Assembly (NCBI GenBank): GCA_965637545.1
Contig: OZ281498.1
Coordinates: 16,368,001 to 16,432,000, forward strand
Reading direction: 5' to 3'
Length of the DNA: 64,000 bases
Source: Phallusia mammillata
Lineage: Eukaryota
Shown: positions 3,001-32,818 of the stretch, in pieces
Layout of the letters: every line of letters starts with the position of its first letter
How positions within the stretch are numbered: the stretch's first letter is position 1
The notes under the pieces: model-generated
Databases searched by the model: none
Seen by the model: only the letters and a program-made list of their open reading frames with translations
Told to the model about the DNA's origin: nothing
Translations under genes and position numbers: made by a program

Positions 3001-5407
3001 GGCAGACGTTTTACAAGACAGTGGTGTTGGTGATTAGATATCGGCTGTTTTTGCGCAGCTATGCTATGTTGTTTTATTAAGTTATCAAGCACATTTTCAG
3101 TTTTGGAAAATTGTGTTTAAAAACTGACCTTGAACGACAATATCAAGGTCAAAGCATGAGATTAAATTGAAAGTATTTTTCCTGTTCTTATTTACTGTTT
3201 TTTTGTAATTATATGACAATAATGATGCAAAAAGAATCTGGACAAATCTTTTAAAGTTGGGATAAGGCTAAAGTTGGTTAAGTTTTTCCTTAAGAATCTA
3301 AAAATAACCAGGATGTTTGTTTACTATAAATCCGCACAAACGCGCATGTGGGGACCCATTCGTTTTTGCTTGCAAAAACAATCATATGTGTAGATCAAAT
3401 GATGTGTATAGTAAATTGGTAAATATCTAACAATGATTGTGCCCTATTTTTACTGTTACCAAATCGCATATGCATAGGTGTGGGGACCCATTAGATTATG
3501 CTTGCAGAAACAATTATGTTATAAAGTGCCAGGAAAAAGATAGGGACCCAATGAAATGTAGGTGCCAAATATATATCCATTATAAATGTAGTAAATGGTA
3601 TATGTGATACATCGTTAAATATGGTGTAGTACAGGGGTCTCAAACTCAAACTGCTTTAAGGGCCAAAAACAAACTTTTAAGTAAGTCGAGGGCCGCATTA
3701 TCGAAACATTTGTTACAGTGTAACATGCAACAAAAGTATTGCATGATTTAAATCTAAAATGTTCATTTATACCATTAACCACATTAAAAACAACACAATA
3801 AGAAACAGATATATAGTGTAATTAAGCACAAGAACAAACTGTGCTTTATTGCTTTGTGTGAAAACAATGACCTTTAATGACGCAACAATGGAAAAATATG
3901 ATGCAACAATCGAAATTGCTCATTCTAAAGAGGAGCTTTTTAATTTTTTTCTATTAAAACGCTGCATATATACCACTAACAGAAAGTGATTGTATCTTGT
4001 AAACTTACTGATCTGACAGGATATTACGCCTGAGTAAAACACATAACTTCAAAAAGTGACTTCGCGGGCTGCACAAAAACACTTGGAGGACCGCATGCGG
4101 CCCGCGGGCTTTGAGACCCCTGGTGTAGTATAAATAAACTGGCAATATACAGGAAAACCAGTATTCTAGTTTATATTTGTTTTATGCAGAAAGTAGCGAA
4201 GGAAAGACTTGCCGCATTTAAGGACACCAAAACCCTTCAAGCAAATGCTTCTGGTAAGATGCAGAACTTATGTCTGTCTATGAAATGTGTAGCTCTGTGC
4301 TTCAAAACCACAAGTTTTAACCATATTTACTTGCAGACCCATCTGACACCATTTTCCTGCACAATCTTCTGTGTTCTCGTGAGAACCTAAAATTCAAGCA
4401 GCTACAACAGAAACTGGTTGAGGCTGGAAAATCAGGGCTCTTTGATGCTTGGATGCTAAAGGAAAGTGATTTAGTCCAGGTATTTATTTGTGAAATTAAA
4501 CACAGTGCAAAGTTGGCAGTCCTGGGCAAATTGCATGCATGGAAAGAATAGTGTCCAACATTTTTTAACAGTATGTTTCCCTTACCTTCTGTTAGACCTC
4601 TTGTACCCACTATGCATTTTTTGTGTAATTTCGTGGTTGAATATTATTGGTAAAATGGTATTGGTTCATGTCACGAAATAGCCAGTTTATTTAAAACTGC
4701 ACTAATTGATGTTCAACTTAACATGCCCTTTAAATTAAAGACGTTGTCAAACATCTTCAAAGAATGTTTATTGGTGTCTTTTTCAGTCTTCAGCAAAATC
4801 GTTTGGGGAACGCTTGGTCAGCGAACAAATGCTTGCAACAATAGGCAGTGATGAAACAGATGCATCCCTTAAATTGACCCTCAAGTTGGTCCACCATCTA
4901 TATTTGGCAGATGTAGTTGAACGTGATATGGGATGGTTCATTGCAGAAGAACTTATGACTCCACAGCAAGCAAAACAGGTGAAAGGCCCAATTGGATTCT
5001 GTAGCAGTGTATCAATTTCAAAACTTATTTTTATTTAAAAAACGACAAATCAACAGCCTGAGTTTCAACTCAAAATCCTTCTAAAAATCCCTTCTTGTTA
5101 AAATGTCTCTAACCTCTGTTCATATTGCTTAAGTAGCATCTGTTCTTTTTCTGCCTGATAAGAGAACTATATGAGCTACCTGAAAACACAGCATGTGCAA
5201 TGAAGTTTTTATTTAGAAACAGTTTACTATTTGTGCATATATTTGTTTTTTCAGCTTTCAACTGTATCGGCAGATCTTTGCAGGGAAATGGCCCCTATCA
5301 GTTTACAAATTTGTGAGTCATTCAAGATAACAAAGGAAATGTTATCGGCTCCAATTGCACTTGACTGGGTGGACTACAATGTTGGTGACAACCAGGGTGA
5401 AGTGTAA
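1..5407 (+). CDS. Peroxisomal acyl-CoA oxidase family gene, 3' part (5' end lies outside the window). Exons approx. 1-153, 218-309, 552-682, 1551-1757, 1828-1917, 4190-4253, 4337-4478, 4787-4978, 5255-5407
   Basis: GT-AG bounded exons join into [110 protein letters not shown]. These are acyl-CoA oxidase motifs (GVDNA, RERCGGQGY, TAEGDN). Paralog (ACOX3/ACOXL-like) not resolved. Confidence 0.92.
1057..1526. mobile_element. hAT-type MITE
   Basis: TIRs CAGGGGTCACCAAAC / GTTTGGTTACCCCTG; exact 8-bp TSD GTCTAAGC at 1049-1056 and 1527-1534. Confidence 0.9.
2115..3430 (+). mobile_element. Unclassified non-autonomous dispersed element, also present inverted at about 58975-60684
   Basis: Begins ATGGGTCCCC and has GGGACCCAT motifs near the other end (about 3351, 3483, 3544). 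Internal tandem sub-repeats at about 2200-2800. Long stretches are the reverse complement of 58975-60684. Confidence 0.75.
3632..4122. mobile_element. hAT-type MITE
   Basis: TIRs CAGGGGTCTCAAA / TTGAGACCCCTG; exact 8-bp TSD GTGTAGTA at 3624-3631 and 4123-4130. Confidence 0.9.
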
Positions 5408-9306: not shown

Positions 9307-9440
9307 CTGCAAATTTAAAGATATAGCATATCATTTGATTTAGTCTAGTTAACAGTCACATACTCATAAACTAGAGTTAAAATGCCATTTTTTCTTTTGT
9401 CACATGTTATTATATGTACAGTTTTGTTGTTTGTTTACTA

Positions 9441-9928
9441 CAGGGGTTCCCAACCTGTGGTACGCGTACCACTAGTGGTACGCGAAGGGTTTTCAGGTGG
9501 TACGCGAGTAGCTTCTGTTTTGTTTACAAAAACCTCGATTTGCCACTTTATATTTTGTTTGTCTGGCTTCGTTTACAAAAAAACACTCCCCAGGCCTATT
9601 GTCATTGTTACGTAACTATTTATGTTGTTTCGTATCATTACGTTCTTCAAAATACAGGTCATGTCAATTCTCAACAAAAAGCATAGTTGCTATGAAAAGC
9701 CGAACAACGCTGTGGCACAGTGGGCGTTAATTATGTCAAATGATTGCTCATGATAGATATCATCTACTGTTTTGTAGCTTAAGCTAGTGTTGAATAAAAT
9801 ATGATTCGAACAAATTAGTTGTTCTGTAAGAAGTGGTACCAAAGAGCACATTAGTGCTCTATGGTGGTACGCGTGGTAGTGCAGAGCGTCCAAGAGGTAC
9901 GGGATCGTAAAAAGGTTGGGAACCCCTG
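9441..9928. mobile_element. hAT-type MITE
   Basis: TIRs CAGGGGTTCCCAACC / GGTTGGGAACCCCTG; exact 8-bp TSD GTTTACTA at 9433-9440 and 9929-9936. Confidence 0.9.
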
Positions 9929-10930: not shown

Positions 10931-12460
10931 GTTTATTAGCGACTGGATGTTATAGACTATAGAGGAAGCATGGTTTATTTAATTGACTGGTTATGTTTGT
11001 TTCTTTGGTAACGAATAGGAAATTTGTGCTAACTGAACTGTTGCCGGTCGTCCAATGTGTAATTGTGCATTTCTGGCCCACGGATCCCACACCGTCGTCA
11101 GCCAACTTGCTGTTGCTGTAAATAACTGTATTATCCCGGTAAGCTTTGTTGCCTAAAGTCTCACAGTTCGTTACTAATGTGTTTTGGTGATGTTTATTGG
11201 ATTTGATGCTGTATTTGCAGAACCTAAAATCTCCTGATCGATTTGAATGTTACTGTGACTCTGGTCCTATAATAGTTCGGTAAGAGTCAACTGTACTGAT
11301 AATTTCTCGTCTGTTTCCTTAACTAAATTAGTGCATATTTGCAGAAACCGCATTTGCCCTTGTGCTCGTATTGCTGCTGAACCCTTGAGCGCCATCTCTG
11401 TCCTGAATTGCCTTAATAAAAGAATTCGTTATTTTAGCTCTTGGTGCCTTGGAGTTGTTGAGCGCGAGGAAAGGCGCGTTGAGAACCGTTCTAGGAATTT
11501 AAGCGATCGCCCCTGCTGTGCTGTCTGGGCGCATAGAGTCACGCCCTCTACCAATTAAAAGACAGCGCAACATCTACCTTTGGCAATGAAGGCAAAGTGC
11601 GATTGGAAAATGCCCGGCTGCGATAATTGTAAACTAAAAAAAGTTTTTTTTTTGGAAGTTAAACCAAAAAGTTGGTTTTTTGAAACTAACACGATGAATT
11701 TGCTCAAGTGAAATTGCAACGATGAAATAGCCTACCACGATATACACTGCCGCGACAAAATTACCACGTCAAATCATCATGATATAAATGCTGCAAAGAT
11801 ATGCCTATTATGAAACAGGCATTCTTGTTGGACTGGACAACAGGTAAAATGACCGGAAATTATTCTATTCTTGATGCCTTCAGGCCCCATTTTTAAGATT
11901 TAATTTTGTAAGAATTTGTCCGCAAACACAAATCAAAGTTCCTTTTTGTGGCTTAGATAATTCTAATGAAACTTTTATAATACAAATTCCAGCTAGCTTT
12001 GCTGTCGATGATGGAATATATGTGGCAAACTGGCAGGATATGAAAATGTGTCAAAATAGTAATAAAATTAAATAAAGTTTACCAGGCATTTAGGGTAGGG
12101 CCGGAGTAGGCTCTTATAATTAATGAAAGGGTATGTGTATGTGCCGCGTAAACGCTTTTAGGGTGATCCCAGCAGTCGCATCGAATGAATGGTCGAACTG
12201 GCGATCATCTATTACTAAACTGATATGTGTAGCATAATTGCGAAGCAGCCAACCACGTTAAAAATTCAATTTCGGCTGGCTTACCCCACAGCTCTTCTAT
12301 TTTATTTATCGTTAGGCTATTCTAATTTTAGAACTGAACAGGAATACATTATAATATTGCCAGCAGGTAATCCGACGCAAGTGCTACACGAGCTTGATGC
12401 AAATGCAACATTAATTTAATTAATGTATATGTTTATTGTTTTCTTTTGTATCAAATAGAA

Positions 12461-13251
12461 CAGTGGTTCTCAACCGGTGGTACGCGTGGGCTGACACTAG
12501 TGACTAGTGGTAGGCTACGCAACGGCAATCCTGGTGATACGCCAACACCTTTTGATATTTTATACATCCCATATTTTTTTGCACACCAATCGCTTATTCC
12601 GACTTAAAATGTTTGTTACTTAAAAAAATGAGTTGCGTATCACTTGTTATGCTGGTGCAAAATTAGGATGCTATAAATTTATTGTCATCAAATGTTTTGT
12701 CTTTAATTGTTTCGGCATAACTGAAACAAAATAGATTTTGCGCTCACGGACAAACTAGTTTCGAAGGCATAAAAAATTTCTCTTGGTACAATGCCGACGC
12801 TAAAACATCTTTTACAAAATATTGTGTCGAATGTCATTTTGCCTCGCATTAATCGGTTGATGAAAAGCAAGCAGTTGTAGATTGCGCATCAGTGTGCTGT
12901 GCTGTACCTAGTAGCCTACTACATTTCAAGATTCACACTGTAACAAGTGCTTGTGGCACCACACAACTTTTAGTAATTTTTAGTGGTTGCAATGTATATA
13001 TGGCACCAAATGTCTGAATGGATTAAATCAGCGGTTGGGTAACCGCTGGTCCGCGAGAAGTTTGTTACCGAGCCGTTTATTTTTTCGGGTTAAATGCTTT
13101 AAAAACATTTTGCCCTTGTAGGTATGCCGGGGATGATAAACTAATTTTGTCGTTTTCATTGCTGAATATTTGTACTTTTTTGAACGCCGGCCTGCGATAA
13201 GTTTTCAGTTTCAAAAACGGTCCGCAATACAAAAAAGATTGCCGACCCCTG
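12461..13251. mobile_element. Nested or decayed hAT-type MITE fragments
   Basis: CAGTGGTTCTCAACC start with the GGTACGCG subterminal motifs shared with the 9441 element; GCCGACCCCTG end; no matching TSD. Confidence 0.45.
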
Positions 13252-16160
13252 GGTTATAAGATAGACTATAGAGACTCTGAAACGTGCCTGAGATTATAGA
13301 AAAGATTCTTTTCCAAACATTAATGAGGAAAGTCAGGTCGTTTACTGTTGACACTTTACGAAGTCATCAGGCTTTTCTTAATCGACAATCACAAACGTCA
13401 GCTTTTTTAAAGGATAATTACGAGTCAGGCCTTTTTTAACACGTGACTTCGTCATGCCACTGAGCGATAATAATTATGAGAGTATAAAGGCCTTCACCAA
13501 TAAACAAAAAAAAAACAGGTATTTTCTGTAGAAAAAAAACATATCAGTCTTGTAATCGCGACTTAAGTACGTCCTACTACAGTCCATAACTTTGTAATTG
13601 TAATAGCTATTTCAGACACTTTTCGAAGAAATTAGCCTGATCAGGCCGAAAAATATTTTGTACAACACTGTCACCTATGTCAGGCCAGTTATGCCAGTCA
13701 GGCTTTCAGTAGAACCTAAAGTTTTCTTGCAAACCCTGTTTGGCCAAGCGTTAGCTCGTTTTATGTGGGTGTATTGTCGTATGACCGGCACGACTTTAAA
13801 TACTAGATTTGATCAGATATTTGTTGAAGCAAGTCACTAAATACTGGAGCACGTATGCACTGTCCAACCACAGTGTACTTTGATTAAATGGCATATGAAG
13901 TTGAAATAATCTGCGTCTTGCTTAGCTGCTTCACAGTCTGTGCATTTCGACTTTGTTCTTTTGCCTAGCATTGGTAAGTTATTTTACACCTTCCTTAGAT
14001 GAAAATATTAAGAATTGGATCTAACTTAATGCGTGTTCGGACCAAACAGTTATGCATAATGTTATACACAACAATAGTACGAAAACTCAAGTTTCATAAC
14101 ACGATTTCGGCTAAAAGTAATCCGAAAAGTGAGTCCAAATAAGTTAGATTAGGCGCTTAAGAGTGTTTTTCTTCTTTAGTCTTTTTACCCAGTAAGACCT
14201 TTTTACCTTAGTCTTTTAGTCGTTTTACCTGCAAAACAGACGGCCCTTGGGCAATTTGGGCCCGAGGAACTTTTTTAACTTGGCCTGTGAGTTGAATATT
14301 GTCGGTAAACTACGATTTTATTTAAGCAGAAATTTAAAAGTAAATAAACAACGCGACCTTTGCTGTTTATTACCGCACATTAGTTGACTGTCTCTAATCT
14401 GTTGTGAATGTGTGGTGAATAAGCATTGCTTGTTTTGGAGACAGCATTTCATCGAATTTTGTTGATAATGTTTCGTTTGATTTGCTTTTCTTCCTCGCCG
14501 TCAACCATTTTCTCTTATTTCAATTTTACGGTCATTATTTAAACGTTATCACTCATGTATGCAGCTCGGACATACCGTTTTTCTGTTGCGGCTCGTTAAA
14601 ATTGCAAATTATTAGTCTACAAATGCTAAGAGAAATCACCTTTGAGTCTTTATCAATCAGTTGTTTACGATACAAATATACTTATTGTTTTGTACTGTAT
14701 ATATTGTAAATATGACGCGGTTGTGGAATGTGGCAGATAACAAAGCTTTTATATCAAACAATTCGCGCCCTTGTTTGCGACCTTTTGAGGCGGGAATGCG
14801 AGCTTTTTTGCACAATGTGCGCGAAAAGGCACAATGCGGGCACATTCTGCAAATATTCACTATGAGCCCTTCTGAATGTTTCGTCCAGGCTTTGCCCCTA
14901 CGTGCCGGCGCCCACGTCATCCGAGCAATGCTTCTAAATTAAGCCACTGATAACGAAAGAAGGCAATTGTTCACTCACAGTTGTTACTCTTAGAAATTAA
15001 TATCGTAAGGAAACGGATTTGGGTAATTCCTGGGCGATGTAATCCTATGAAACTAGGTAAAATTAATTCTACCTGTCGTTGTAGGGAAACTTTCGTGGAA
15101 ACTAAATTAACTTTGGAATGTTGCAAATAACGTTTCCCACGCACTTTTTGGACTTGCAGTACACCTAAATGTTATGAGAAGATTTAAGTGTGGGCCCATA
15201 ATATGTTTTTAAAATAGCTTTGACAAAACAATTTAAGATAAGACCAATCGTTTACAAACGCTTACCACCAGGAATGCTGTCGAGTACCACTAGTGGCACA
15301 CGTACTCCCAGTTGGGAAACACTGCTATATATACAGCATAATGTACGCACACCTTCGCAAAACAAACATAATGCTACGATTTAGTGTTAAAAAAACTGAC
15401 AAATTTGCTGTTTTTTTAACTGTTATTCTATTGCTATTCTAGCAGTGTTGCAGCGACCAGAAAAACGAGATTTGTGGACACATTTGATATCAAATAAATA
15501 CAAGGACAGTTAACTGGTACTATAAAAGTCAAGTTAAATGACACAGTAGTCTGCTGTTTTACCACTCAAACAAGGTTTAAAATTTATCATGTGGCAAGTA
15601 CGAACCAAAGACAACGCTCAGCTTTAGGTGGACGGTAAACCTTGATTTGAACAAAACAGATGGATCGAGTTACAGGGGGATTAAATCTTTTTGTTATCGA
15701 TTTAAACATGAATTAACTTCAGCGTTGTCGATCAAACTAAAACAATAGCAACGGGCGATCGTGCTTTCCATGTTGTAAAAGATGTAACAGGTCACGTTTT
15801 GTTGTTTGGGTTGTTGAGCAAAAAAAGATTTTGAATTGTCGGGATTTTTTGGTAAATTTTGTGATGCTCGTTTCTGTAGGCTCTGATTGAAATCAAAAAC
15901 GGATTATTTTTTTATGAAGTCGCTGCTTTAAATTAGAAGAGGCCCTTCCTCTACATGTATATAATTTTTAGGAAATATTTAATCCATGTAATTTTACTGA
16001 CAGAGAGATTGTCCTTCTACTAAGAAGTTACAGGTCATGTACACTTTAGCAAATAGTTTGTAGGAAGATCGAAACGCAAACTCTTTATTTGCTGGATTTG
16101 GATTTTAAATTGGTACTTTTTAATGCAGATTATAGGCTGATGTGAAAGCTTTGGTAACAA

Positions 16161-19100
16161 ATGGCAGAAACTTTGGCAAACCATCCAAACTTTTGTGTAA
16201 AAAACGATTTTATTCGTAATATTGCATCGTACGTTGTACGCAAACACCCCAAAAAGAAGTTTAAAACCCGCACTGAAACATTAACAGCCGCAGTTTCGTT
16301 GTTTATTACAAATGAAACCTGGGGACAAAGTCTAGACCTGCTGCCTATTTTAGAATATGCTTGGGATTCGGTCCAAAAAACACTTGGAATTTCGCTGCCA
16401 GTCTCCGAAAAAAGTGGAAAAAGAAATGTAGAAAGGTATTCCACTGAATACCACGACTCTTCCCTAAATGTTCGATTCCGTGTTCTTAAGCCAGATTCGC
16501 TTGAATTTGAAAACGACATCTGGAAATACTACTTTGCAGCATTATATGCAGTTCAGATCTTGCCGACAGATGAGTTTGAAAAGTTGTTGCAGCACATTCT
16601 CAAATGTTGCAAGGGAAATGATCAAACATTAGCTAAAAATGAACATTTCTACACTTTTTTGTTTGGATTTTTCAACACCAATGTATCAACTTCCATCGCA
16701 AGTTTCACTGATGGAAAGACAGATTTTTTAAAAAATAAGCTAAATATTGTCGTGTCGAGCTTTGAGAAGGAAAACATTGAGAAGTCATGTTTGTATGAAT
16801 GGGCGTACGAGGTACAAAGTCCAGATATTTGCAAAGCTTTTCGACATGGTTTATCCTCTGAAATCAAACTAAATGCCGCTGATTCGAACTGTGCGCAAGT
16901 GATCATAGTAGCTGGGTTATCCTTAATGATAAAAACATCCGAGGAGAGATGTGCCATTGAATTTGTCTCCTTTAATTTTGTAAGTATAATCACTAGCGAA
17001 ATTGCGTGTGAGTTTTAAATAATGTACTTCTATGCAGGAAGAAAAAGAAAGCATGCGGTATTTAATTTCATCGCTGCCGTACATACACTATCTTACAATG
17101 GACAACTGTCAAATAAATCCAGCAAGCTTTCGACTTTTGTCTGAAGGAATTTCAAACCTTACCTTGCCTGTAAGTATGAGCTTTCAACTGCCATGGTAAA
17201 CTGTTGCGTTCTAAACATTGAATTCATTTATATTTCAGATGCTGGCGCTAACTGTAAAGGAATGCAATTTATTAAAGAGTCTTAAATACCTAGGAACTTG
17301 CTTGCATAACATAAACGAACTTAGTTTGATTTGCTGTGATATCGACCAAAAAGGTTGTCACACACTGGCATCTGCGATACTTAAAGTTCGAAAAACGGTT
17401 TGTTGCACCTACGATATCATAAACTTATATACAGTATTAGGCGTGTTGTCTTTTATTAGATTAAACTGGACTTGTATGGAAACGCCATTGACGATCACGG
17501 TGTAAAGTATTTGTCAACCTGCTTAAAGTATCTGGAGGAACTCAGCCTAATGTTTAATGCCGTAACGGAGGAGGGTGCGAAACACCTTGCAGCGTGTTTG
17601 AAAAGACTGGACCACCCGGTGCAGAAATCAGGTTATGTGCAATGGTGTACAGCTTTTTTAAGTAAATATCCTTATTTCAGATAAAAATAAATTTATCGGG
17701 ATGCAACATTTTCGACGAGGGACTAAAATGTTTGTCAACTCATGCTGATAAAATCGCTGAACTTGATGTGGAAGGATGCGGAGTAACTGAGATCGGAACA
17801 AAACATCTTTCACAAACTGTCAGGAGACTCAAATATCCGGTGAGCATTTATTTTTTTCTTTGTTGGATATTTATTAGGGCATGTGCTACAGATGAATAGA
17901 CTGAATATTTCTGGAAACCCACTTCAAGACGGAGGTGTAGCGTTTGTGTCTGGTTGCTTGTCTAACATCAGAGAACTCACTTTGCGCGATTGCAACGTGA
18001 CGAGCAATGGATGTGAAACTCTAGCAACCGGCATAACTGAACTACACCAATCGGTATGCGATTGATTGAAACTCTTGTTGTGTCATGTTAACTCTTTGTT
18101 ACCGTTTGGACATTATTTGGCTTTACTAAAGAATTTCATAGCACTTTTGAAAGGGTTATCTATAAGTCATATTTACAGCGCTTCTGTCAGTTTATTTTGT
18201 TTTATTTTTGTAGTTGGAAAAGCTAGTATTGACCGGAAACGATATCGGTAACGAAGGAGTCAGTTTCATATCGAAATGTATTTCAAATATGGGTGGTCTT
18301 GACGTCAGCAACTGTGGCTTCACCAGCGACGGGGCTGAAGCATTGTCAACGGCTGTGAAAGAATTGCATTACGCGGTAATGTCAGTTTGGTGCACATTTT
18401 GCAGGTCAACTGATCACCTTTATAAACTAGATTACGTCACTTCTTTTGGAAGATAATGCAATCGGAGACAAAGGGGTGAAGGGAATTGCATCTTGCTTGT
18501 ACAACATCAAGGAATACGATAAAACCGCCAAAGAAAATATGGGGTGGCAAATGTCGGATGTCGCAAGATCCAGACTTCAATCGATGGTGTCCCGTTTACA
18601 CGCAATGGTAAAAAGTTGTTGTAACTGAACTCTATAGATTTTTTACCTACTGTTTACATCTGGCAGAGAAACTTTGATGTTATCAGTGATACGTACACAG
18701 AGTTGGGCAAAGGCGGAGGAAAACTACAGGTCGATGGTTCTGTCGTACGTGTCCCACCCGGCGCTCTGGACGAAGAAATGAAGTTTCAAATCACTTCCTA
18801 CTACGGCAAAGATATAGAAACCGTAATTAGTAAAACTTACCAAATCCTTGGTGGCGCAAAATAATAATAAACATTTTTAGAGCACGGTGACACCTACTTT
18901 GGAATGCAGGCCGTATTTCAAAAAGTTTAAGAAGTCGGTGTCATTGTCCATGCCCAACTGCATGATATGCGATCAGCCTCAACCTTTTTCGGTTGGTAAA
19001 TAATATAACAAAACACTATTGATGAATAACGTTAATCCGCAAAATTGGAATAGATTTGGGCGAGCAATGATGGATTGGAATGGCAAAAAATTGGAACTCT

Positions 19101-20478
19101 AATCCATATAAATCAAAGGCGACACCATTTTACCACCAATCATTTTACCTGGTAGGTTTTTCTAATGCCATGCTAAACCGCAACTACAAGGAGCATGTAG
19201 ACGTAAAAATATATGAAGATATTAAACTTAAATTTGTAGATTTATATGGAAAGTTTATCAACAGCGCCCTACATAATTACTAGGTTCAGAATGGAATGGC
19301 TTCGGAGTCTGTTATCATTTTCATACAAAAAAGAAAAAACTTTGATTTGCCGAATATGCCAGGAGAATCAATTTGGCCCAGATCAAACAATACTAAAAAT
19401 TATGCTGTGTGATAACGTTGGCAATCATGAAAGTCGAAACAATAAAGATGTTTTCAAAGATAATATTCTTGTTGGGTGAGTACGTAAAGTGCTTTCGTTT
19501 TACAAAAACGTCTTCCGAAATAGATCTAATCTCTTACTAGCTTATAAATTATAGGCTATCTGACATTTGTATTAAGACCTATCTTTGAATCAGTGGTTCT
19601 TCTGTGGCCATTTTTCACTAAAGGTTTGCCCCCCAGATTTTTGGCACATTTTTTTGTATAACTGGACCGCAATTGTTTAACTTGATGTTTTACTTAATTT
19701 TATTTTCAACAATATATTTCCCCAATTAAAAAATGCCTTTCATGTCGTCTGTGAAACAAAAATGATTTTTTCATGATTTTTGCTGCAAAAAGTTTTAGCG
19801 TAAAGTGATTACAAACTCGTTGAACCTATATGCAATTGAATTCCAACGCCATGAGGTATTTTTTCATGCCAAAGTCGGATAATTCTAAAAGCTTTCTTAT
19901 ATACACAGCTCAAAAGTAAAGGACGCTGAACTACACCTTGAAAGATTTCCTCAACAAGTTAAATGCGATAAGACAAGCTACAAGCTGGAAAACTTTTTTG
20001 TCAAGTCTTACACTGAGAAGCAATTTCTCTTACGACGTACAGGGTCACTTAATGGAGACTATTGTTTTCGGGTGGTTATCAAATTGCCGAATAAAAAAGT
20101 GATCTACGGTGATCATGAAACTGGCACATTTTACACAGATCCTTTTCGCAACCCATTTTACAATCAGGTAACTGATGTAAAACAAAATATTTGTATTGGT
20201 GTTTTGAGCTACCTGTAAAATATAAAAGGTGTTTATATATTTGTACATATTCTTAAATTCAATATTCTGTTTTCGCAGATGTCTGTTATGTCAACATGCT
20301 CAAGACAGAGTAAGTAATCTAATTGTTAATGCTAGTCATGAACAACTTTATTACAGACCGGTATGAAATGTCTTGTTTAGGTGTGGGATTCCACGGTGAT
20401 GCATCCGGCTCTGTTATCGGAGGAGAAAATGTGAACCTTACAAACAACTATTATGCAACTAATTCAAATCACAACTAA
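16161..20478 (+). CDS. NLR-like protein, copy 1: HD1/winged-helix/HD2, LRRs, ZU5, HF/TW motif, UPA-like domain, RHIM-like C-terminal tail. 15 exons; N-terminus uncertain
   Basis: First exon has LANHPNFC (HD1-like), WKYYFAALY (WH-like) and YEWAYEVQ (HD2-like). 159-162-nt ribonuclease-inhibitor-type LRR exons follow (e.g. LDLYGNAIDDHGVKYLSTCL). Then GGKLQVDGSVVRVPPGAL / VTPTLECRP..FKKSVSLSMPNC (ZU5), TTNHFTWF, and a final exon VGFHGDASGSVIGGENVNLTNNYYATNSNHN*. All exon phases join in frame to TAA at 20476-20478. Confidence 0.82.
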
Positions 20479-21202: not shown

Positions 21203-24200
21203 CTACGCTCTCCATATAAGCCACTTTGGTTTTTTAATTGTAAACTCGGACATGTTGCGAATTTGATTTGGATTGTGACTCTCAGAAATTCCATGTTCGC
21301 GCAGTGTCCTCTGACGTTGAGCTTCTTTCATTATGTTTAGCCACTTGTACTTCTGACTGACAACAACTGCACGAATCCTGTTCAACAACAAAATAATGAC
21401 AAAGCCGTTCTTAAAGGCGAAGAAAATGGTGGTGTTAGACACAGCCCCAAACATTATCATCATGACCAGACGAACAGATAGAAAGGGAATGTCTTGGAAA
21501 AGCAGACCCACGGCCAAACCCCATATTTCGTTATAAAAGCAAAATATCTGGTTGTCATGGCGACAAGGCAAACAACAGGCTGCTTGGCTATGATCTGTAG
21601 TTTCGTCAGCTGCTGTTATTTCGGTTGTAGCTTTAGGTTGATCTTCTGTATTCTTTTCGGGCTGCACAATAAATCAGTACAAAATATATTTACTGCCAAC
21701 GGTTAATTTCAAGGATTTTGTTGTTGTGAATTTTGTAGACTGCTTTATTCCGGTTTGAAATTTATATTGTTTTATCTGTGACAAAAGTTAGGCACTTGGT
21801 TAATTTACAACATTATTTGTTGCTTGATAATTGGTAATTAACTGACAGCAAAAAACTTTCGGATTGTTTCTCTGCACCAAAACGTAACTTAATTACAATT
21901 TGCATTGGGTTTTACGCACAAAACTTTAAGTTGGACGAACCATTTTCAACCAAATATTTTGTTTCGGAAATCTTTTGGTTTCGAAATAATCTTTCCTCTA
22001 CGTGATTAAATTAGTGTTTTGTACACTTTCGGCCACAAACAAATAATTTTTTGAATTATTGAATAGGATAATTGTTTTAAATTAACCACATTCAATCGGG
22101 ATTTTTCGTTCTCGACGCGAACTTTTCAGACAGGTTTGGTATATAACTGGTTTTACGGTTGACTAAACAAACCTGATCTTCCATTTCCCTGATTTCTTCA
22201 AAATGTCCCTCCTTGGATTTTGCAAACGCTTCTCCGGATATGTTTGGCATGTCTTGACTTGCAGTTGTAACAAAGCTGAACTGCAACAAACTCCAACTCC
22301 ACACTGACAGAATGATGTAAATTGCCACTGGGTCAGGTAGCTGTAAATAAATATTAAGCTTATATTAACCAAAACTATAAATATAAATACAAACCAAACA
22401 CTATCAGGTGTACAAATGTACTTCTTTTTATCCAACTTGTATAAAGCAACAGTTTTCGGAACACCAAAAATTAGGCTCGGTAATATTCGTTTTTTTTTCA
22501 GTCCAAACCTGAATGCTTTCATCAACTTACATTTCTGATTTTTTCATTTCTAGTCAGATCCAACATTCCCATGATATCTCCTCCTGTGCCCAAGTAAACC
22601 AGCAGAAGTTGAGAAAGTTCGTCTTGAGACATTTCACCTTTTGGAGCAATCCATTTACCAACGATCAATATTAACAAAATGGCTTGCTCCAATGCCAGGG
22701 TCCAAGCTTCATTTGCAAGACAAACACCAAGCTGCAACATAGTTAGATTCAGGCCGGTATTTTTCAATCGCTAGTGCGCGAACGCAAACGTGACCGTTTA
22801 AGGTTTTCATATAGACCTAAGCTTAAGTCTTCAACCACCACAGGTTATACAAAAACATTTTTTGTATAATTTTGTAACATATTTTTCCACACTTAAATTT
22901 TGAGAAACGTTCATAAGCCAATTGGTGTTCTGGAAAGACCATTATTTTTGATAAGAAAGTACTTTTTCTTGCATAAAAGAATAAAATTTTCTTGCATAAA
23001 AAATAAAATATCTTAGAAACATATGTGGAAATTAAATTACTCTCTCGGGAATGAGGTCTAAATCAATTCACAGATATTGGGTTTCTTATGGTCAGAATTG
23101 ACAGGCCTACTTACAACGGAATCACAGCTTGTTGTGTTGGACGGAACACTACTTATCATAGCTGTTTGGTGAGTTTTAATTTCCCAGAACCAAATACATG
23201 GAATTGCACCCATGAGGTAAATCATCACTCCTGGACTCATCCTGCAAAACAAAATATCGCTAAAGATATGAAATTTATAAGTTTAGTAATACTCTTTCGT
23301 TCGCCTCTTGGGAGTTTTAATAGGCAAAATTTGGGCCTGAATAAGTTTCTGCAACACATTAAAGTCCATTTAAAAATATTGTTTACAGTACTTCGCATGA
23401 AAGCATGTCGATTTATAATTCTGGTGAATTTACCCTGATGGTTTAAAGTTTACGGGATTTGTTTTCGAAACAATTAGACAAGAAAGTTTTAAGGCGGACT
23501 TGTCTGTTTTAAATCGGTGGTTGTTCATCGGCAAATAAACAACCTTTGCGTTTTTTTTGGTGGTTTACAGAATATAAACCTAATGGAAATAAATAGGTAA
23601 TATAAATAAAATATTACAGCTAAAGCAGTGGTTCTCAAACTGGGGTCCGCGGTCCAACAGGGGTCCGTGAAGCAATTTTGTGGGGACCGCGAAAAGGTTG
23701 ACGTACTTCTATAATGTTATTTGGCGTCAGTTTGTGTCACTGAATAATTTTAAATCAAAGTAGAATTTAAGATCGACTGTCTCCATTACAAAACAATAGC
23801 CTTTATTGCATGACTACTATTAAAAATGCAATTGTTCGCACACAATCGTAGTGTTTTCTGTCTTGTCTGCGATGTCGCAAACTATCGTTGGATCATTGTT
23901 ATGCGTAATTTTGTATAACTAGCTAAAATTTTGTAAATCAATTTTCGTTTTGCTTAAATACACATTCAAGCGTATGGACCACGAGCACTCGCTATAATGG
24001 CAAAGGGACCGTTTTGAAAAAATAATGAAAAAGTTTGAGAACCACTGAGCTAAACCAAAGACGATTTAAAACTGCCATGTAAATTAAAAACTGTTTTAAA
24101 AAAATAGGTCCATTACAACATATTTTTGACGTATTTTTATCACAAATAATAAGTACATCAATAACTTTATTACAATTACTGACTATAACATTTCAAAATG

Positions 24201-26886: not shown

Positions 26887-29800
26887 TTAGTTGTGACTTG
26901 AATTAGTTGCATAATAGTTATTTGTAAGGTTCACATTTTCTCCGAAAGCAGAGCCAGATACATCGCCGTGAAGTCCCACACCTAAACAAAACATTTCATA
27001 TTAATTTGTGATAAGTTATTCCTGACTAGCATTTACAAGTAGATTACCTACTTTGGTTTGGGTTGTTGACATGACAGACATCTGCAAAAAAACAGAATAT
27101 GGAATTTAAGAATATGTGCAAATGTATAAACATCTTGTATATTATACAGGTAGCCAAAACACCAATACAAATTTACTACAATTACCTCATTGTGAAAAGG
27201 ATCTGTGTAAAATGTGCCAGTTTCATGATCACCGTAGATCACTTTTTTATTCGGCAATCTGATAACCACCCGAAAACAATAGTCTCCATTAAGTGACCCT
27301 GCACGTCGTAGGAGAAATTGCTTTTCAGTGTAAGACTTGACAAAAAAGTTTTCCAGCTTGTAGCTTGTCTTATCGCATTTAACTTGTTGAGGGAATCTTT
27401 CAATGAGTAGTTCAGCGTCCTTTACTTTTGAGCTGTGTATATATCGAGCTAAGAATTATCTGTCTTTGTTATGAAATAATACCTCATGACGGTGTAATTC
27501 AATTGCTTATAGGTTAAACTTAACGGTAACACTTTTTCGTAACAAAATATTTTTTTTGTGATTTTTTTTGTTTTGGAAAACTATTTCTTAAAATAAAATT
27601 AGGTAAAAAAAAAAAAAAAAAAAACAATTGCGGCCAAGCTTACAGTTATACAAAAATTGTGCCGGGACAAAAACTTTCGAGCAAAATGGGCACAGAAAAA
27701 CCACTGACTCCAAAACTTGCTTGGTGTTTATACAAATTTCAAATAGCCTATAATTTATAAGCTGGTAAATTACTACGTGCTTTCTAAAGCGAAGCAATTT
27801 GGCTTTACTATACTCACCCAACAAGAATTGTATCTCTGAAAACTTCTTTATTGTTTTGACTTTCATGAATGCCAACGTTATCAACCAGCATAATTTTTAG
27901 CTTTTTTTGATCGGGGCCAAATTCATTGTCCTGACATATTTGACCTATCAAAGTTTTTTCTTTTTTGTATGAAAATGATTGCAGCTTTCGCAGCCATTTC
28001 ATTTTGAACCTAGAAATTATTAAAGGCACTGGTAACAAACTATGCTACACTAATCTACAAAATTAAGTTAATAAATTTTACACCTTTTTATGCCTGCTCT
28101 TTGTAGTGGCGTTTATAATGAAATTATAAAAAACTTACCAGGTAAAATGATTGGTGGTAAAATGGTGATGCCGTTGGTTTATATGGATTAGCGTTCCAAT
28201 TTTTTGCCATTCCAATCCATCATTGCTCGCCCAAATCTAGAACATTTTGCGGATTATCTTTTTTATCAATAGTGTTTTGTTATTTTTTACTAACCGAAAA
28301 GGGTTGAGGCTGATCGCATATCATGCAGTTGGGCATGGACAATGACACTGACTTCTTAAAGTTCTTAAAATACGGCCTGCATTCCAAAGTAGGTGTCACC
28401 GTGCTCTAAAAATGTTTACTATTACTTAAGGCCACCAAGGATTTGGTAAGTTTTACTAATTACGGTTTCTATATCTTTGCCGTAGTAGGATGTGATTTGA
28501 AACTTCATTTCTTCGTCCAGGGCGCCGGGTGGTACATGTACCACAGAACCACCGACCTGTAGTTTTCCACCTTCCTCACCCAACTCTGTGTACGTATCAC
28601 AGATAACATCAAAGTTTCTCTGCAAAAAGAAATCAGTACGTTGAAAAGTCTTTGTTGAGTTGGGCTACAACTTTTTACCATTGCGTGTAAACGGGACACC
28701 ATCGATTGAAGTCTGGATCTTGCGACATCCGACATTTGCCATCCCATATTCTCCTTGGCGGTTTTATCGTATTCCTTGATGTTGTACAAGCAAGATGTAA
28801 TTCCATTCACCCCTGTGTCTCCGATTGCATTATCTTCCAAAAGAAGTGACGTAATCTAATTCATAAAGGTATAATTAGTTGATCTGCACTACATGCGCAG
28901 TAAACAAACAATACCGCGTAATGCAATTCTTTCACAGCCGTTGACAATGCTCCAGCCCCGTCGCTGGTGAAGCCACAGTTGCTGACGTCGAGACGAACCA
29001 TGTTTGAAATACACTTTGATATGAAAATGATTCCTTCATTGCCGAAATCGTTTCCAGACAATACCAGCTTTTCCAACTACAAAAATCAAAGCCATTGACA
29101 AAACTGCAAAATGTATGGCTTTATGAATACCCCTTTAAAAAGCGCAGTGCTATGAAACTAGAAGGGTGGATTAGCACAATATGTCATTGCACATACACAA
29201 TAGTCTTTTTTCAAACTTATTTATATTTTCCCACTTACTTTGTATTGGTTCCCATAGAAGGCAATGTTTTTCTAACTTTTGTTCGTTTTTGCAAGCAGAA
29301 ACTTATGCGTCTCCAAGCATGCAAATTTGAAAATAATGTAAATTCTGAACCACAATGACCCAAACTACAGTCCTGTAAAATTTTGTTCACATCGGCAAAT
29401 GTTCAAGATTTTGACCGCCATAGATGATTTGTGCAGCGTTCGGCTTCTTGGAGAAAACCGTCACGAAAGATTTGATCTTGTTGATGGTAAGCCCTGTCAT
29501 TTCACTTTTCTCAACCATCTTGTTCATCATGTTCTGCAGCTTCTCTTCTGTGTCGGCGATGAGTACAGTGTCATCGGCGCGTCTCAGGTTATTGATATTC
29601 ACAGGTCTAGTGACATGATATACCCTTGCCTCACTCCGCGTTCGATGTTCAAATACTCACTCTGCGCACCATCTATCCTCACTGTTGCCTGCTGGTTCCA
29701 GTACAGATTCTGGATCAATTCGATGTCCTTCCTGTCGATATCCAGTGTCTCCAGCATTTGGAACAACGATTCGTGCCTGACTCAAAGTCAGGTCAGTGAC

Positions 29801-31876
29801 ATTATCAAACGCCTAATCGATGAAACAGGCATATATATCACGCTGCATTCAATTGCTCGCTGCGTTATCATCTTCAAAATGAAGATGGCGTTCCGCTTAC
29901 CCTTATCCGGAGTGAACCCGTACTGCTCCTCGCTGACTTCTCCAGTCGTTCTGCCTCGGATGGGGTTAGGTAGGATCTGAAGGATAAGTTTCGTGAGGTG
30001 ACTCATGAAGCTGATGGCTCTATGTTCCTCACATTTTGTGGCACCCGGTTTCTTTTGTAAGTTGATGAAAACAGATTTGAACATCTCCGCTGGAAAATGA
30101 CCTTCATCGTAGATTCGATTTGCTAACTTTGTTATCGTTTCGACTCCAAAATCGGCAAGAGCTTTGATCATTTCCATTGCGATCCCGTCCGGGCTAGTTG
30201 CTTTGCCTCTCGATAGACTCTGTATGACTCGACTACTGCCTTGTAGGTTATACCTCGTCAGGCGAAGGCTAGGAGAAGGAAAACTCTGATTTCTAACCAC
30301 CTACCTCGGTAGGGGATCTAAACCGATCTAGAGGAGCAAGCCTCGACAGAAGCTCCGTCGGAAGGAAACTGGGGCTCCCACCGCCGTACAATGCCCCTTG
30401 AATACAATCATGACAGTACAACATAATTCCATAGTAAGGCCAAATAATGCCCCCAAATTAATGTAAAGTTTGCTGATTCGAAACCAAAAAATCCAATTCT
30501 AATCAATCACATACCGATTGGTGTAGTTCATTTATGCCGGTTGCTAGAGTTTCACATCCATTGCTCGTCACGTTGCAATCGCGCAAAGTGAGTTCTCTAA
30601 TGTTAGACAAGCAACCAGACACAAAGGCTATACCTCCGTCTTGAAGTGGGTTTCCAGCCATATTCAGTCTATTCATCTGTAGCACATGTCCTATGAAATA
30701 CCTAACAAAGAAAAAAAATAAATGCTCACCGGATATTTGAGTCTCCTGACAGTTTGTGAAAGATGTTTTGTTCCGATCTCAGTTACTCCGCATCCTTCCA
30801 CATCAAGTTCAGCGATTTTGTCAGCATGACTTGACAAACATTTTAGTCCCTCGTCGAAAATGTTGCATCCCAATAAATTTATTTTTATCTAAAGTAAGGA
30901 TATTTAGATTTAACAAAAATGCTGTACACAATTACTCATCGTCTGATTTCTGCACCGGTTGATCCAATTTTTTCAACCCCACTGCAAGGTGTTTTGCACC
31001 CTCCTTCGTAACAGCATTAAACTTTAGACCGAGTTCCTCAAGATACTTTAAGCAGGTTGACAAATACTTTACACACCGTGATCGTCAATAGAGTTCTCAT
31101 ACAAATTCAGTTTAATCTATTAAAAGAAAATACGTCAAATAATGTACACTTGTTTAATATCGTAGGTGCAACAAACCGTTTTTCGAACTTTAAGTATCGC
31201 AGATGCCAGTGTGTGACAACCGTTTTCGTCGATCTCACAGCCAATCAAATTGAGCTCGTTTATGTTATGCAAGCAAGCTTCTAGGTATTTAAGACTCTGT
31301 AATATTTTACACTTTCTCACAGTTAGCGCCAGCATCTAAATTGTAAATTGATTTGACGTCTAAACGTAAACTTATATCATATATCCTTACTGGCGAGTCA
31401 AGTTTTGAAATTCCATCAGACAAGTTACGAAAGCTTGCTGGATTTATTTGACAGTTGTCCATTGTAAGATGGTATATGTACGGCAGTAATGAAGTCAAAA
31501 ACCTCATGCTTTCTGTTTCTTCCTGCGTTGGAAAATGTAATTTAAAACTAACGTGCAATTTCGCTGGTGACTCAACTTACAAAGTTGAAGGAGACCAGTT
31601 CAATAGCACATCTCTCCTTGCATGTTTCCATCATTAAAGATAACCCAGCTATAATGATCACTTGCGCACAGTTCGAATCAGCGGCATCTAGTTTGATTTC
31701 AGAGGATAACCCATGTCGAAAAGCTTTGCAAATATCTGGACTTTGGGCCTGGTACGCCCACTCATACAAACATGACTTCTCAATGTTTTCTTTCTCAAAA
31801 CTCGACACGACAATATTTAGCTTATTTTTTAAAAAATCTGTCTTTCCATCAGTGAAACTTGCGATGGAAGTTGATA
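26887..31876 (-). pseudogene. NLR-like gene, copy 2 (inverted paralog of 16684-20478), 5'-truncated and frameshifted
   Basis: Exon-by-exon reverse-complement match to copy 1. Homology stops at 31876. A 2-bp insertion in an LRR exon (CACGGTGTGTAAAG versus CACGGTGTAAAG, plus-strand about 31071-31078) creates a stop. An RTE remnant sits in an intron. Confidence 0.82.
29390..30395 (-). mobile_element. Decayed RTE-clade non-LTR retrotransposon fragment (5' UTR remnant plus partial reverse transcriptase)
   Basis: GKATSPDGIAMEMIK..KKPGATKCEEHRAISFMSHLTK..EEQYGFTPDKG..NAIFIL; NLYWNQQATVRIDG..GVRQG; NINNLRRADD (YADD degenerate). Frameshifts and internal deletions. Absent from the equivalent intron of copy 1. 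Confidence 0.88.
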
Positions 31877-32811
31877 AACCAGCCTGGCCAGATCCCATTG
31901 GAAGAGTGGCTGGCAACAAAACGGGCTGAGCGACGTGCTGACAAAGCAGCCGAAGCAGCAGCCAAAGCAGCAGCCGTAGCAGCGCCCTCAACATCAGGTT
32001 AAATACCTGGCGAACGGCCCATTCCAGGGCCATCCAATTGTTTGTTTGTTTTTTGTAACAATTTGAGTTGTATTTGTGCACTGTATTTTAGTAATAGTTA
32101 TATTATTTATAATAGTTATATGTATTAAATGAGTGCGATTTCTACGTGTTTTACGGCATATTTGGTGCAATTTTGTATCTGTTTTAAGGTACATGTATTT
32201 AGCGAGTGCAATTTTGACGTGATTGTAGTTCGCTGTTATGAACAATATACTGTGACAATTTTGCTACTACGTTGGTGTTCAGTAAAGCAGCAAGTGCTAT
32301 CAAACTTATTATGAGGCAAAATTGCTGGGTAAGCGAGCAAAAAAGTCAGGTGGTCAGATATAAATAGAAAAAACGTATTGTGTTCGTTTTGGGGTAGAGT
32401 TAGTAAAACAAAAGACAATTTAGTTTATCGGTAGATGTAAATGTCATAGAAAATTGTCACGCAAGTGGTGCACAGACAGCAAATGTGCGGAGAAAGGTGT
32501 CCAGCTGAGGGCCAACAAAGATACAAATGAAATCAAATAGCAAATTCAAATTGACGTATTTCAGCAATTTTTTCAGCAGGACACCTTTTTGATAATTATC
32601 GGCAATTATGAGTAAACCTGAAAAACGGAGAAGTTATTATCACAACGCGGAAGATATCAACCCCGAATATGCTTAAAACTTCCCGTTCCGACTTTACCGG
32701 CGCTCTATTGCGCCGCTCCGCGGCGCAATCTCTTGCCCCTTTTCTTTTGCCCCCTTTCCGGCTACGTCTTGCCCCCTTTAGGTAGAAGATTGCGTCCCAG
32801 CTTTCGCGCTT
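31877..32811 (+). mobile_element. Putative 3'-end remnant of a U6-targeting (Dada-like) DNA element
   Basis: Non-NLR, non-array sequence. Carries a plus-strand ORF tail (31877-32002, NQPGQIPLEEWLATKRAERRADKAAEAAAKAAAVAAPSTSG*), a 10-bp hairpin (32707-32729), three TTGCCCC repeats and AGAAGAT. It ends in TCGCGCTT fused to U6 nt 64. Family assignment is inference; no DDE core is visible. Confidence 0.55.
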
Positions 32812-32818
32812 AGGGGCC

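What the first reader, a model, noticed from the sequence alone, without database searches (positions are those of the whole stretch)
16161..20478. NLRP1/PIDD-like autoproteolytic receptor ending in a RHIM-like amyloid motif instead of a CARD or death domain
Seen: an intact spliced frame runs HD1/WH/HD2 - LRRs - ZU5 - TTNHF/TWF (codons 19141-19151 plus the next exon) - about 160 aa beta-rich region - a short G/N-rich last exon. Established: ZU5 followed by HF/SW is the PIDD autoproteolysis site, and ZU5-UPA (FIIND) cleavage in NLRP1/CARD8 releases a UPA-CARD fragment that nucleates filaments. Here the nucleophile position is Thr and no death-fold follows. The tail VGFHGDASGSVIGGENVNLTNNYY aligns by eye with RHIMs (RIPK1 TIYNSTGIQIGAYNYM; RIPK3 TINNCSGVQVGDNNYL). 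Inference: a sensor that self-cleaves and signals through an amyloid, an architecture I do not know from a characterised animal NLR.
Basis: partly seen in the sequence, partly recalled or inferred. Interest (0 to 1): 0.88.

Follow-up and report, generated by a model that had tools for sequence, protein, structure and literature searches.

The report
NACHT-less LRR–ZU5 receptor gene with Asn/Gly tail
This is a real, selection-maintained animal gene for a leucine-rich-repeat protein that continues into a PIDD/NLRP1-type self-cleavage module and ends in a short Asn/Gly-rich tail instead of a death-fold domain, but it has no NACHT ATPase, its expression is unconfirmed, and the tail's likeness to the RHIM amyloid motif is no better than chance.

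Summary
Fifteen exons with GT-AG borders at 16161-20478 (+) give an intact 957-codon frame.

**Supported**
- RNI-type LRRs: Pfam LRR_6 passes its cut-off in three exons.
- ZU5: weak but consistent support. It is the only Pfam hit for exon 10, and the top PDB hit is the ZO-1 ZU5 domain.
- HF|T sits where PIDD, NLRP1 and CARD8 cleave.

**Not verified**
- UPA fold, cleavage, transcription and splicing. The only runs holding the locus are DNA.

**Selection**
- An inverted paralogue at 31876-26887 (-) is a recent pseudogene.
- dN/dS against it is 0.32 (p = 1.6e-13), and 0.12 in the ZU5 exons.
- A neutral copy would rarely keep this frame open, so copy 1 is maintained by selection.

- No P-loop or NACHT exists anywhere in the window. 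This is an NLR-derived, PIDD-like protein, not an NLR.
- The RHIM reading fails every test run:
  - No (V/I)-Q-(V/I/L/C)-G tetrad.
  - No Pfam or PDB RHIM match.
  - Alignment to RIPK1/3 is no better than shuffled tails.
  - The segment aligned to the RHIM core is what differs between the copies.

An amyloid-type tail is not excluded, only unsupported. The scan noted ZU5-UPA genes with short tails elsewhere in this genome. One was followed up, with the same negative RHIM result.

The parts
16161..16979 (+). Exon 1 (273 aa): ATG start, helical region that looks like the HD1-WHD-HD2 part of an NLR NOD module but without the NTPase
   Evidence: Open frame closed by TAA at 16155-16157 just upstream. 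No Pfam hit, no PDB hit, no true homologue among 1.84e9 representatives. The language-model atlas gives only leads: STAND/NACHT-associated domains and NLRC3-like WHD_NOD2/NLRC4_HD2 at 0.85-0.88. By eye there is a WHD-like 'F..D.W..YFAALY.V' motif, with Asn where NLRs have the ADP-contacting His. AF2 single-sequence model failed (pLDDT 33.7).
17038..18607 (+). Exons 2-8: RNI-type leucine-rich repeats. Exons 3-7 are 159-162-nt phase-0 modules, each the length of two repeats
   Evidence: Pfam LRR_6 in exons 4-8, E 5e-9 to 9.5e-3; exons 4, 6 and 7 score above the gathering cut-off, exons 5 and 8 below it. Internal repeat hits in tblastn. All borders GT-AG.
18667..19151 (+). Exons 9-11: ZU5-like domain ending in H-F|T (19141-19149); the Trp codon is completed by G at 19284
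   Evidence: Exon 10 alone: its only Pfam hit is ZU5, E=0.069, profile positions 57-86 of 97. Top PDB hit is the ZO-1 ZU5 domain 2kxs, E=0.7, at the equivalent position. dN/dS 0.12 against copy 2. HFT is identical in copy 2. Exons 9 and 11 have no hits on their own.
19284..20167 (+). Exons 12-13: about 150-aa region in the place of UPA (identity as UPA not shown)
   Evidence: No Pfam or PDB hit per exon. Atlas gives only Ig-like/beta-sandwich leads below 0.85. The AF2 model of exon 13 has three beta strands but pLDDT 51. dN/dS 0.57. The only indel against copy 2 is 12 nt, in frame.
20279..20309 (+). Exon 14: 31-nt micro-exon (linker MSVMSTCSRQ); it sets the frame of the tail
   Evidence: Strong acceptor ttttcgcag| and donor |gtaagt. 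Copy 2 has 34 nt here, so the phase is kept. No RNA evidence.
20381..20478 (+). Exon 15: 31-aa G/N-rich C-terminal tail plus TAA
   Evidence: Frame is open to the same stop in both copies. There is a 3-nt in-frame indel. The last 54 nt are 52/54 identical, while similarity collapses downstream of the stop (3' flank 42% identical). No RHIM tetrad, no Pfam or PDB match, shuffle test negative, no look-alike in protein databases.
26887..31876 (-). Copy 2: inverted paralogue and recent pseudogene
   Evidence: tblastn and blastn give 86-98% identity per exon. It starts at the equivalent of codon 175 next to the U6 array. Exon 4 has +2 nt (161 vs 159), giving a frameshift with stops. All other exons are open and all splice sites are kept. 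Intron 6 is 1.4 kb instead of 160 nt and holds extra ORFs at 29.3-30.3 kb.

Best explanation
A lineage-specific, selection-maintained gene for a cytosolic receptor-like protein derived from an NLR but lacking the NACHT ATPase. Its order is: NOD-type helical remnant, about a dozen RNI-type LRRs, a ZU5-like domain with H-F|T at the autoproteolysis position, a ~150-aa UPA-position region, and a short disordered G/N-rich tail in place of a CARD or death domain. In architecture it is closest to PIDD1 and to the LRR-FIIND half of NLRP1. Inferred mechanism (not shown): the folded ZU5 strains the Phe-Thr bond and Thr attacks it, as Ser does in PIDD/NLRP1/CARD8 and as Thr does in the related GPS motif. 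The two fragments stay together until the LRR half is removed or displaced. The C-terminal fragment then self-associates and uses the conserved end (GENVNLTNNYYATNS) as a short interaction motif for an unidentified partner. The tail is not a RHIM by any test available here.
For: Intact 957-codon frame with 28 canonical splice sites. LRR_6 hits, three of them above the Pfam cut-off. ZU5 is the sole Pfam hit and the top PDB hit for exon 10, both at matching positions. HFT is conserved in both copies. dN/dS is 0.32 overall and 0.12 in ZU5, Fisher p=1.6e-13. The chance of an open frame under 3% neutral substitution is about 0.01. All indels in exons 13-15 are multiples of 3. Similarity between the copies collapses downstream of the predicted stop. 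No death-fold or other Pfam domain in the C-terminal exons, and no further coding-looking exon before the TMEM26 gene on the other strand. Ser/Thr/Cys N-O or N-S acyl shift is the accepted chemistry for this class (PMC3210808). ZU5 is grouped with GPS and Nup98 autopeptidases (PMC3482391).
Against: No transcript evidence. The two runs that hold the locus cover introns evenly, so they are DNA. Twelve RNA-labelled runs of the species hold next to none of its sampled words, and no contig of the two that were laid (X3, X6) fell on the locus. ZU5 support is below Pfam's cut-off because each exon had to be searched alone. Nothing identifies exons 12-13 as UPA. Exon 1 has no detectable homologue. The frame starts in the middle of a NOD module, which is what a truncated duplicate would look like. 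The sister copy is a pseudogene.
Confidence: 0.55

Rival explanations
1. One reading: the tail is a RHIM-like or otherwise amyloid-forming signalling motif. After cleavage, UPA-driven clustering nucleates a cross-beta fibre that templates a partner carrying a matching motif, as NWD2 does with HET-S in fungi or BASS pairs do in bacteria.
For: Position and size fit: a terminal ~30-aa unstructured segment on its own exon after a linker, in the slot of a CARD or death domain. The composition (7 Asn, 6 Gly, with V/I/L/Y in short runs) is compatible with beta-arches. The last 18 codons are nearly invariant between copies. Earlier notes report short N/G/V-rich terminal exons on other NLR-like and ZU5-UPA genes of this genome. 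RHIMs replace death-fold domains in Branchiostoma immune proteins, including a NACHT protein (PMC4262963).
Against: No RHIM tetrad. No Pfam hit to RHIM, HET-s, sigma or any other motif family at E<=10. No PDB RHIM match. Alignment to RIPK1/3 is at chance level. The segment aligned to the RHIM core is the variable one. No second copy of the motif exists anywhere else in the 64-kb window, including the kinase-like gene at 55 kb. No look-alike was found in protein databases. dN/dS of the tail exons (0.35, from 6 synonymous and 8 non-synonymous changes) is not informative. The follow-up on a sister family reached the same negative result.
Confidence: 0.13
2. A non-functional remnant: a 5'-truncated partial duplicate of a full NLR-FIIND-like gene that is no longer, or never was, expressed, with a frame that happens still to be open.
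For: The frame begins inside the NOD helical region, and there is no NACHT anywhere in the window. No contig of the two RNA-labelled runs that were laid fell on the locus. The neighbouring copy is disabled. The surroundings are rich in repeats, and a U6 array abuts copy 2.
Against: dS between the copies is 0.18, yet copy 1 has no stop, no frameshift and no lost splice site. The simulated chance is <=1% even at 3% drift. dN/dS of 0.32 is too low if either copy had drifted for most of that time.
Confidence: 0.17
3. A full NLR whose NACHT exon lies outside the window (>16 kb upstream) and splices into an internal acceptor of exon 1.
For: Exon 1 resembles the part of NLRs that directly follows the NTPase. 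An AG at 16166-16167 could in principle act as an acceptor.
Against: The gene's 14 introns are 55-433 nt. The 16 kb upstream hold an ACOX gene and repeats on the same strand. The acceptor context is poor. An in-frame ATG directly follows a stop.
Confidence: 0.05

Closest known systems
PIDD1 (LRR-ZU5-ZU5-UPA-death domain)
   Same: No NTPase. LRRs followed by ZU5 with an H-F|(S/T) site at its end and a UPA-position region. Autoprocessing is expected to separate the sensor and effector halves.
   Different: One ZU5 instead of two. RNI-type (NLR-type) LRRs and an NLR-like helical N-terminus. Thr instead of Ser. A 42-aa linker plus tail instead of a death domain.
NLRP1 / CARD8 FIIND (ZU5-like + UPA-like, S-F|S) followed by CARD
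   Same: RNI-type LRRs run directly into the ZU5-like module. Cleavage would release a UPA-effector fragment.
   Different: No PYD and no NACHT. HFT instead of SFS. No CARD. UPA not verified. FIIND-CARD NLRs are reported for mammals and fish only in the survey read (PMC11508797).
RHIM (RIPK1, RIPK3, ZBP1, TRIF; Branchiostoma RHIM proteins including a NACHT protein, PMC4262963)
   Same: A short unstructured motif in the slot of a death-fold domain, rich in Asn/Gly.
   Different: Core tetrad absent, no profile match, chance-level alignment. The literature reports no RHIMs in tunicates (PMC4262963, PMC12119088); an earlier scan note, not checked here, calls this genome's genes sea-squirt-type.
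Fungal and bacterial NLR amyloid signalling (NWD2/HET-S, BASS)
   Same: A terminal ~20-30-aa motif on a receptor, which could in principle act as the signalling element.
   Different: There the motif is at the N-terminus of a STAND NTPase and is matched by the same motif on an adjacent effector gene. Here it is C-terminal, there is no NTPase, and no partner motif is in the window.
Other ZU5-UPA genes noted in this genome by the scan (s1-349151 membrane-anchored HFS family; s1-347118 LRR+ZU5-UPA)
   Same: ZU5-UPA modules; s1-349151 ends in a short tail instead of a death domain, and s1-347118 has LRRs before the module, as here.
   Different: s1-349151 is membrane-anchored with Ser at the site.

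Membership tests
NLR (NACHT-LRR receptor) | NACHT/NB-ARC NTPase with Walker A P-loop | tested here: not met
   No G-x4-GK[ST] in a coding context in any of six frames of the 64-kb window. No NACHT Pfam hit in exon 1. The frame is closed 3 nt upstream of the ATG.
NLR (NACHT-LRR receptor) | C-terminal RNI-type leucine-rich repeats | tested here: met
   Pfam LRR_6 in exons 4-8, best E=5e-9; three of the five exon hits are above the gathering score.
NLR (NACHT-LRR receptor) | HD1-WHD-HD2 helical domains | tested here: inconclusive
   No Pfam, PDB or homologue hit. Atlas leads to NACHT-associated and NLRC3-like WHD/HD2 clusters are below 0.9. AF2 failed.
ZU5 domain (PF00791) | Match to the family profile | tested here: inconclusive
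   Exon 10 alone scores 13.9 bits (cut-off 21), E=0.069; it is the sole hit and is at profile positions 57-86/97. The ZO-1 ZU5 domain is the top PDB hit, E=0.7. The domain is split over three exons that could only be searched apart.
Autoproteolytic ZU5-UPA / FIIND (PIDD1, NLRP1, CARD8, UNC5CL) | [H/S]-F|S triad at the end of ZU5 | tested here: inconclusive
   H-F-T sits at the expected place, 45 residues after the ZU5 match, in both copies. The nucleophile is Thr, not Ser; this is chemically competent (PMC3210808) but untested in this family.
Autoproteolytic ZU5-UPA / FIIND (PIDD1, NLRP1, CARD8, UNC5CL) | UPA beta-sandwich after the cleavage site | tested here: inconclusive
   No UPA or FIIND hit per exon. 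The exon 13 model has pLDDT 51. The spliced protein has no reference, so it could not be folded or profile-searched whole.
Autoproteolytic ZU5-UPA / FIIND (PIDD1, NLRP1, CARD8, UNC5CL) | Actual self-cleavage | not testable with these tools
   Needs expression of wild type versus Thr-to-Ala.
Autoproteolytic ZU5-UPA / FIIND (PIDD1, NLRP1, CARD8, UNC5CL) | C-terminal death-fold effector (DD or CARD) | tested here: not met
   No Pfam domain in exons 12-15 at E<=10. Stop at 20476-20478. Nothing coding-like lies before the TMEM26 gene on the opposite strand.
RHIM | Core tetrad (V/I)-Q-(V/I/L/C)-G within an 18-20-residue motif | tested here: not met
   Regex search of the window finds no such tetrad in either copy's tail. 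Definition taken from PMC13506858 and PMC12119088.
RHIM | Profile or sequence similarity to known RHIMs | tested here: not met
   No Pfam RHIM hit at E<=10. No PDB hit. The shuffle test gives 1539-3574 of 5000 shuffles scoring at least as well.
RHIM | Amyloid formation and homotypic partner | not testable with these tools
   No partner motif in the window.

The most novel reading that the evidence does not exclude
An animal FIIND-like module (apparently a tunicate's, per an earlier scan note) whose released C-terminal fragment signals through a short amyloid-forming tail rather than a death-fold filament. This would be one of a genome-wide set of terminal Asn/Gly motif exons on NLR-like and ZU5-UPA receptors, an animal counterpart of fungal and bacterial NLR amyloid signalling that is unrelated in sequence to RHIM.
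Probability: 0.12. Interest if true: 0.85.

Novelty: new variant of a known kind. Interest (0 to 1): 0.45.

Why it matters
In the surveys read here, LRR-FIIND receptors are reported only for vertebrates, and always with a CARD. A selection-maintained LRR-ZU5(HFT) protein with neither a NACHT nor a death-fold domain raises two questions: how a self-cleaving sensor signals without either, and whether Thr works as the nucleophile in this family. If the short tails seen on several receptor families of this genome turn out to be matching interaction or amyloid motifs, that would be a new signalling logic for animals. The present evidence does not show this, and the specific RHIM claim should be dropped.

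Tried and rejected
1. Homologues
   - Exon 1 against 1.84e9 representatives gave only two spurious repetitive proteins.
   - The tail ORF and exon 13 against the 5.8e9-cluster database gave no candidates.
   - Exon 13 against metagenome contigs gave nothing.
   - So no orthologue or paralogue outside the window could be compared.
2. RNA evidence
   - The two runs holding the locus (X1, X2) are genomic.
   - The two RNA-labelled runs that were laid (X3, X6) gave no contig on it.
3. Structure
   - AF2 on exon 1 gave pLDDT 33.7 and on exon 13 gave 51.1.
   - Both are too poor for fold search, so none was run.
4. The whole spliced protein, or the ZU5-UPA part, could not be given to Pfam, PDB, AlphaFold or the homologue search.
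   - All searches are therefore exon by exon, which weakens ZU5 and may hide UPA.
5. PDB sequence searches of exons 1, 9, 11, 12, 13 and 15 were all blank at E<=10.
6. I considered a matching motif on the neighbouring kinase-like gene, as in a fungal-style receptor/effector pair. No motif-like string exists outside the two copies.
7. I considered a degenerate NACHT upstream. Nothing NACHT-like appears in the three forward frames of 9-16 kb, and there is no P-loop anywhere in the window.
8. Findings search by sequence was blank.
Full report
**1. What is in the sequence**

I rebuilt the gene from the raw sequence. Fifteen exons between 16161 and 20478 on the + strand join into 2874 nt, which is 957 codons plus TAA. 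Each exon is bounded by AG and GT.

- The ATG at 16161 follows a TAA at 16155-16157, so no upstream exon can enter there.
- The introns are 55-433 nt.
- Weak point 1: the exon 10 donor is TCG|gttggt. It is the only donor that keeps the frame, and it reads gttagt in the paralogue.
- Weak point 2: the tail's frame depends on the 31-nt micro-exon 14. If that exon were skipped, exon 15 would read as an unrelated 17-aa end.

**2. Domain content, exon by exon**

The spliced protein has no reference and long sequences may not be typed, so every database search had to be made on single exons.

- *LRRs.* Pfam finds LRR_6 (RNI-type, as in NLRs) in exons 4-8, with E down to 5e-9; exons 4, 6 and 7 pass the gathering cut-off.
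- *ZU5.* The only Pfam hit in the C-terminal exons is ZU5 in exon 10: E=0.069, profile positions 57-86 of 97. The best PDB sequence hit for the same exon is the ZO-1 ZU5 domain at the matching place, E=0.7. HFT lies 45 residues later, at the end of the ZU5-like domain, which is where PIDD, NLRP1 and CARD8 cleave (PMC3210808). I take ZU5 as supported, though below formal thresholds.
- *UPA position (exons 12-13).* There is no hit in Pfam, PDB or the atlas beyond generic beta-sandwich leads. An AF2 model of exon 13 has three strands but pLDDT 51. 'UPA' therefore rests only on position, size (151 residues) and beta character.
- *Exon 1.* There is no Pfam or PDB hit. There is no real homologue among 1.84 billion representatives: the two hits are repetitive proteins. 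AF2 failed with pLDDT 33.7. Language-model neighbours are STAND/NACHT-associated domains and an NLRC3-like WHD_NOD2/NLRC4_HD2 cluster at 0.85-0.88. These are leads only, but they agree with a by-eye WHD-like motif.

**3. It is not an NLR in the strict sense**

No Walker A motif in a coding context occurs in any frame of the 64-kb window. Nothing NACHT-like lies in the 7 kb upstream. The same-strand neighbour further upstream is an acyl-CoA oxidase gene. The protein therefore starts inside what would be the NOD module. In architecture it is PIDD-like, with NLR-type LRRs.

**4. A second copy, and what it says about selection**

tblastn found an inverted paralogue on the minus strand, 31876-26887. 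It is disabled in three ways:

- It begins at the equivalent of codon 175, directly next to a tandem array of U6 snRNA genes.
- Its exon 4 carries two extra bases, which cause a frameshift.
- Its intron 6 is swollen to 1.4 kb and holds extra ORFs.

All its other exons are open in the right phase, and every splice site is kept.

| Region | dN/dS vs copy 2 |
|---|---|
| All exons (dS 0.18, dN 0.058) | 0.32 (Fisher p=1.6e-13) |
| ZU5 exons | 0.12 |
| UPA-position exons | 0.57 |
| Tail exons (6 synonymous, 8 non-synonymous changes) | 0.35 |

Simulated neutral substitution at 3%, 6% and 9% leaves copy 1's frame open in 1%, 0.02% and 0% of trials. Copy 1 is therefore a gene kept by selection, and copy 2 died recently.

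Exons are generally more alike than the introns beside them: identity is 0.86-0.97 against 0.67-0.91, apart from the 31-nt exon 14 at 0.80.

**5. Are the last two exons real?**

Evidence for:

- Consensus splice sites flank both exons in both copies.
- The three indels in exons 13, 14 and 15 are 12, 3 and 3 nt.
- The same stop codon is used in both copies.
- The last 54 nt are 52/54 identical, while similarity collapses downstream of the stop (3' flank 42% identical).

Evidence against, or missing:

- There is no RNA evidence. The two runs that hold the locus cover introns evenly and are DNA.
- The RNA-labelled runs of the species hold next to none of its sampled words. No contig of the two that were laid fell on the locus.

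**6. The RHIM claim**

RHIMs are 18-20-residue motifs with a core tetrad (V/I)-Q-(V/I/L/C)-G (PMC13506858, PMC12119088). The tail fails each test made:

- It has no such tetrad.
- Pfam gives no RHIM, HET-s, sigma or other motif family at E<=10.
- PDB RHIM chains are not matched.
- No second copy of this motif exists in the window, including the kinase-like gene at 55 kb.
- No look-alike was found in the protein database.

Amyloid propensity as such could not be tested.

**7. Thr as nucleophile**

Autoprocessing by N-O or N-S acyl shift uses Ser, Thr or Cys (PMC3210808). ZU5 has been grouped with the GPS and Nup98 autopeptidases (PMC3482391). From my own knowledge, the GPS site is typically H-L|T. 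HF|T is therefore plausible chemistry, but it is untested for ZU5-UPA.

**8. Comparison with the literature and the scan**

- No paper in the library combines ZU5 and RHIM in one protein.
- A survey of metazoan NLRs lists FIIND-CARD only for mammals and fish. It lists ascidian NLRs as NACHT-LRR or NACHT only (PMC11508797).
- ZU5/FIIND fusions to other adaptors occur in invertebrates (PMC8195603).
- RHIM-bearing immune proteins, including a NACHT protein, were described in Branchiostoma, and tunicates were said to lack RHIMs (PMC4262963).
- The scan has already noted ZU5-UPA genes elsewhere in this genome: a family with short tails instead of death domains, whose follow-up also found no support for RHIM; an LRR+ZU5-UPA gene; and NB-ARC-TPR genes starting with a 32-aa N/G/V-rich exon. 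These are leads, not independent evidence. They do suggest the architecture is a family trait of this genome.

**9. Verdict**

This is a real gene with an unusual variant of the PIDD/NLRP1 plan. It has no NTPase and no death-fold domain, it has Thr at the cleavage position, and it ends in a short conserved tail of unknown role. The headline claim, a RHIM-like amyloid effector, is not supported. It survives only as a low-probability hypothesis about a non-RHIM motif.

Noticed in passing
window 32812-~54000: Tandem array of about 16 repeats of 1306-1316 bp (GC 0.47 against 0.36 around it), each carrying a U6 snRNA gene on the minus strand. Rfam gives U6 at 116.7 bits at 34075-34181 and 35391-35497. 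A truncated U6 (model positions 1-62) at 32812-32875 sits at the array's edge, next to the break point of copy 2. Only 31500-36500 was scanned with Rfam; the copy count comes from the periodic ORF pattern.
   Followed up: partly
window 29342-30300: Two long overlapping ORFs (212 aa on +, 170 aa on -) lie inside the enlarged intron 6 of copy 2. The minus-strand one looks by eye like the N-terminal part of a non-LTR retrotransposon ORF2, but Pfam gives no hit.
   Followed up: partly
window 54986-55696 (-) and 58182-58532 (-): Kinase-like ORF (Pfam PK_Tyr_Ser-Thr, E=3e-5, only profile positions 53-152). It belongs to the gene another note calls an MLKL-like pseudokinase. It carries no copy of the tail motif.
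   Followed up: partly
window 21206-21673 (-): Last exon of a TMEM26-family gene (Pfam Tmem26, E=2.4e-13), convergent with copy 1 and lying between the two copies.
   Followed up: no
window 464-5035 (+): Exons of an acyl-CoA oxidase gene (Pfam ACOX E=7e-7; ACOX_C_alpha1 E=3.4e-3).
   Followed up: no
window 19161-19273: Contigs of both DNA runs also carry a form that skips 111 bp inside intron 11 (ends CT..AC, so not a splice). This is an indel allele or a further paralogue. LRR exons reach 2-4 times the baseline word depth, so more paralogues with LRR exons >=90% alike probably exist in the genome.
   Followed up: no
window ~9400-9600, 12450-12600, 13030-13200, 15250-15380: A recurring short element appears upstream of the gene; its translated fragments share strings such as 'GTR..TSGTR'. 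It is probably a SINE-like repeat, seen by eye only.
   Followed up: no
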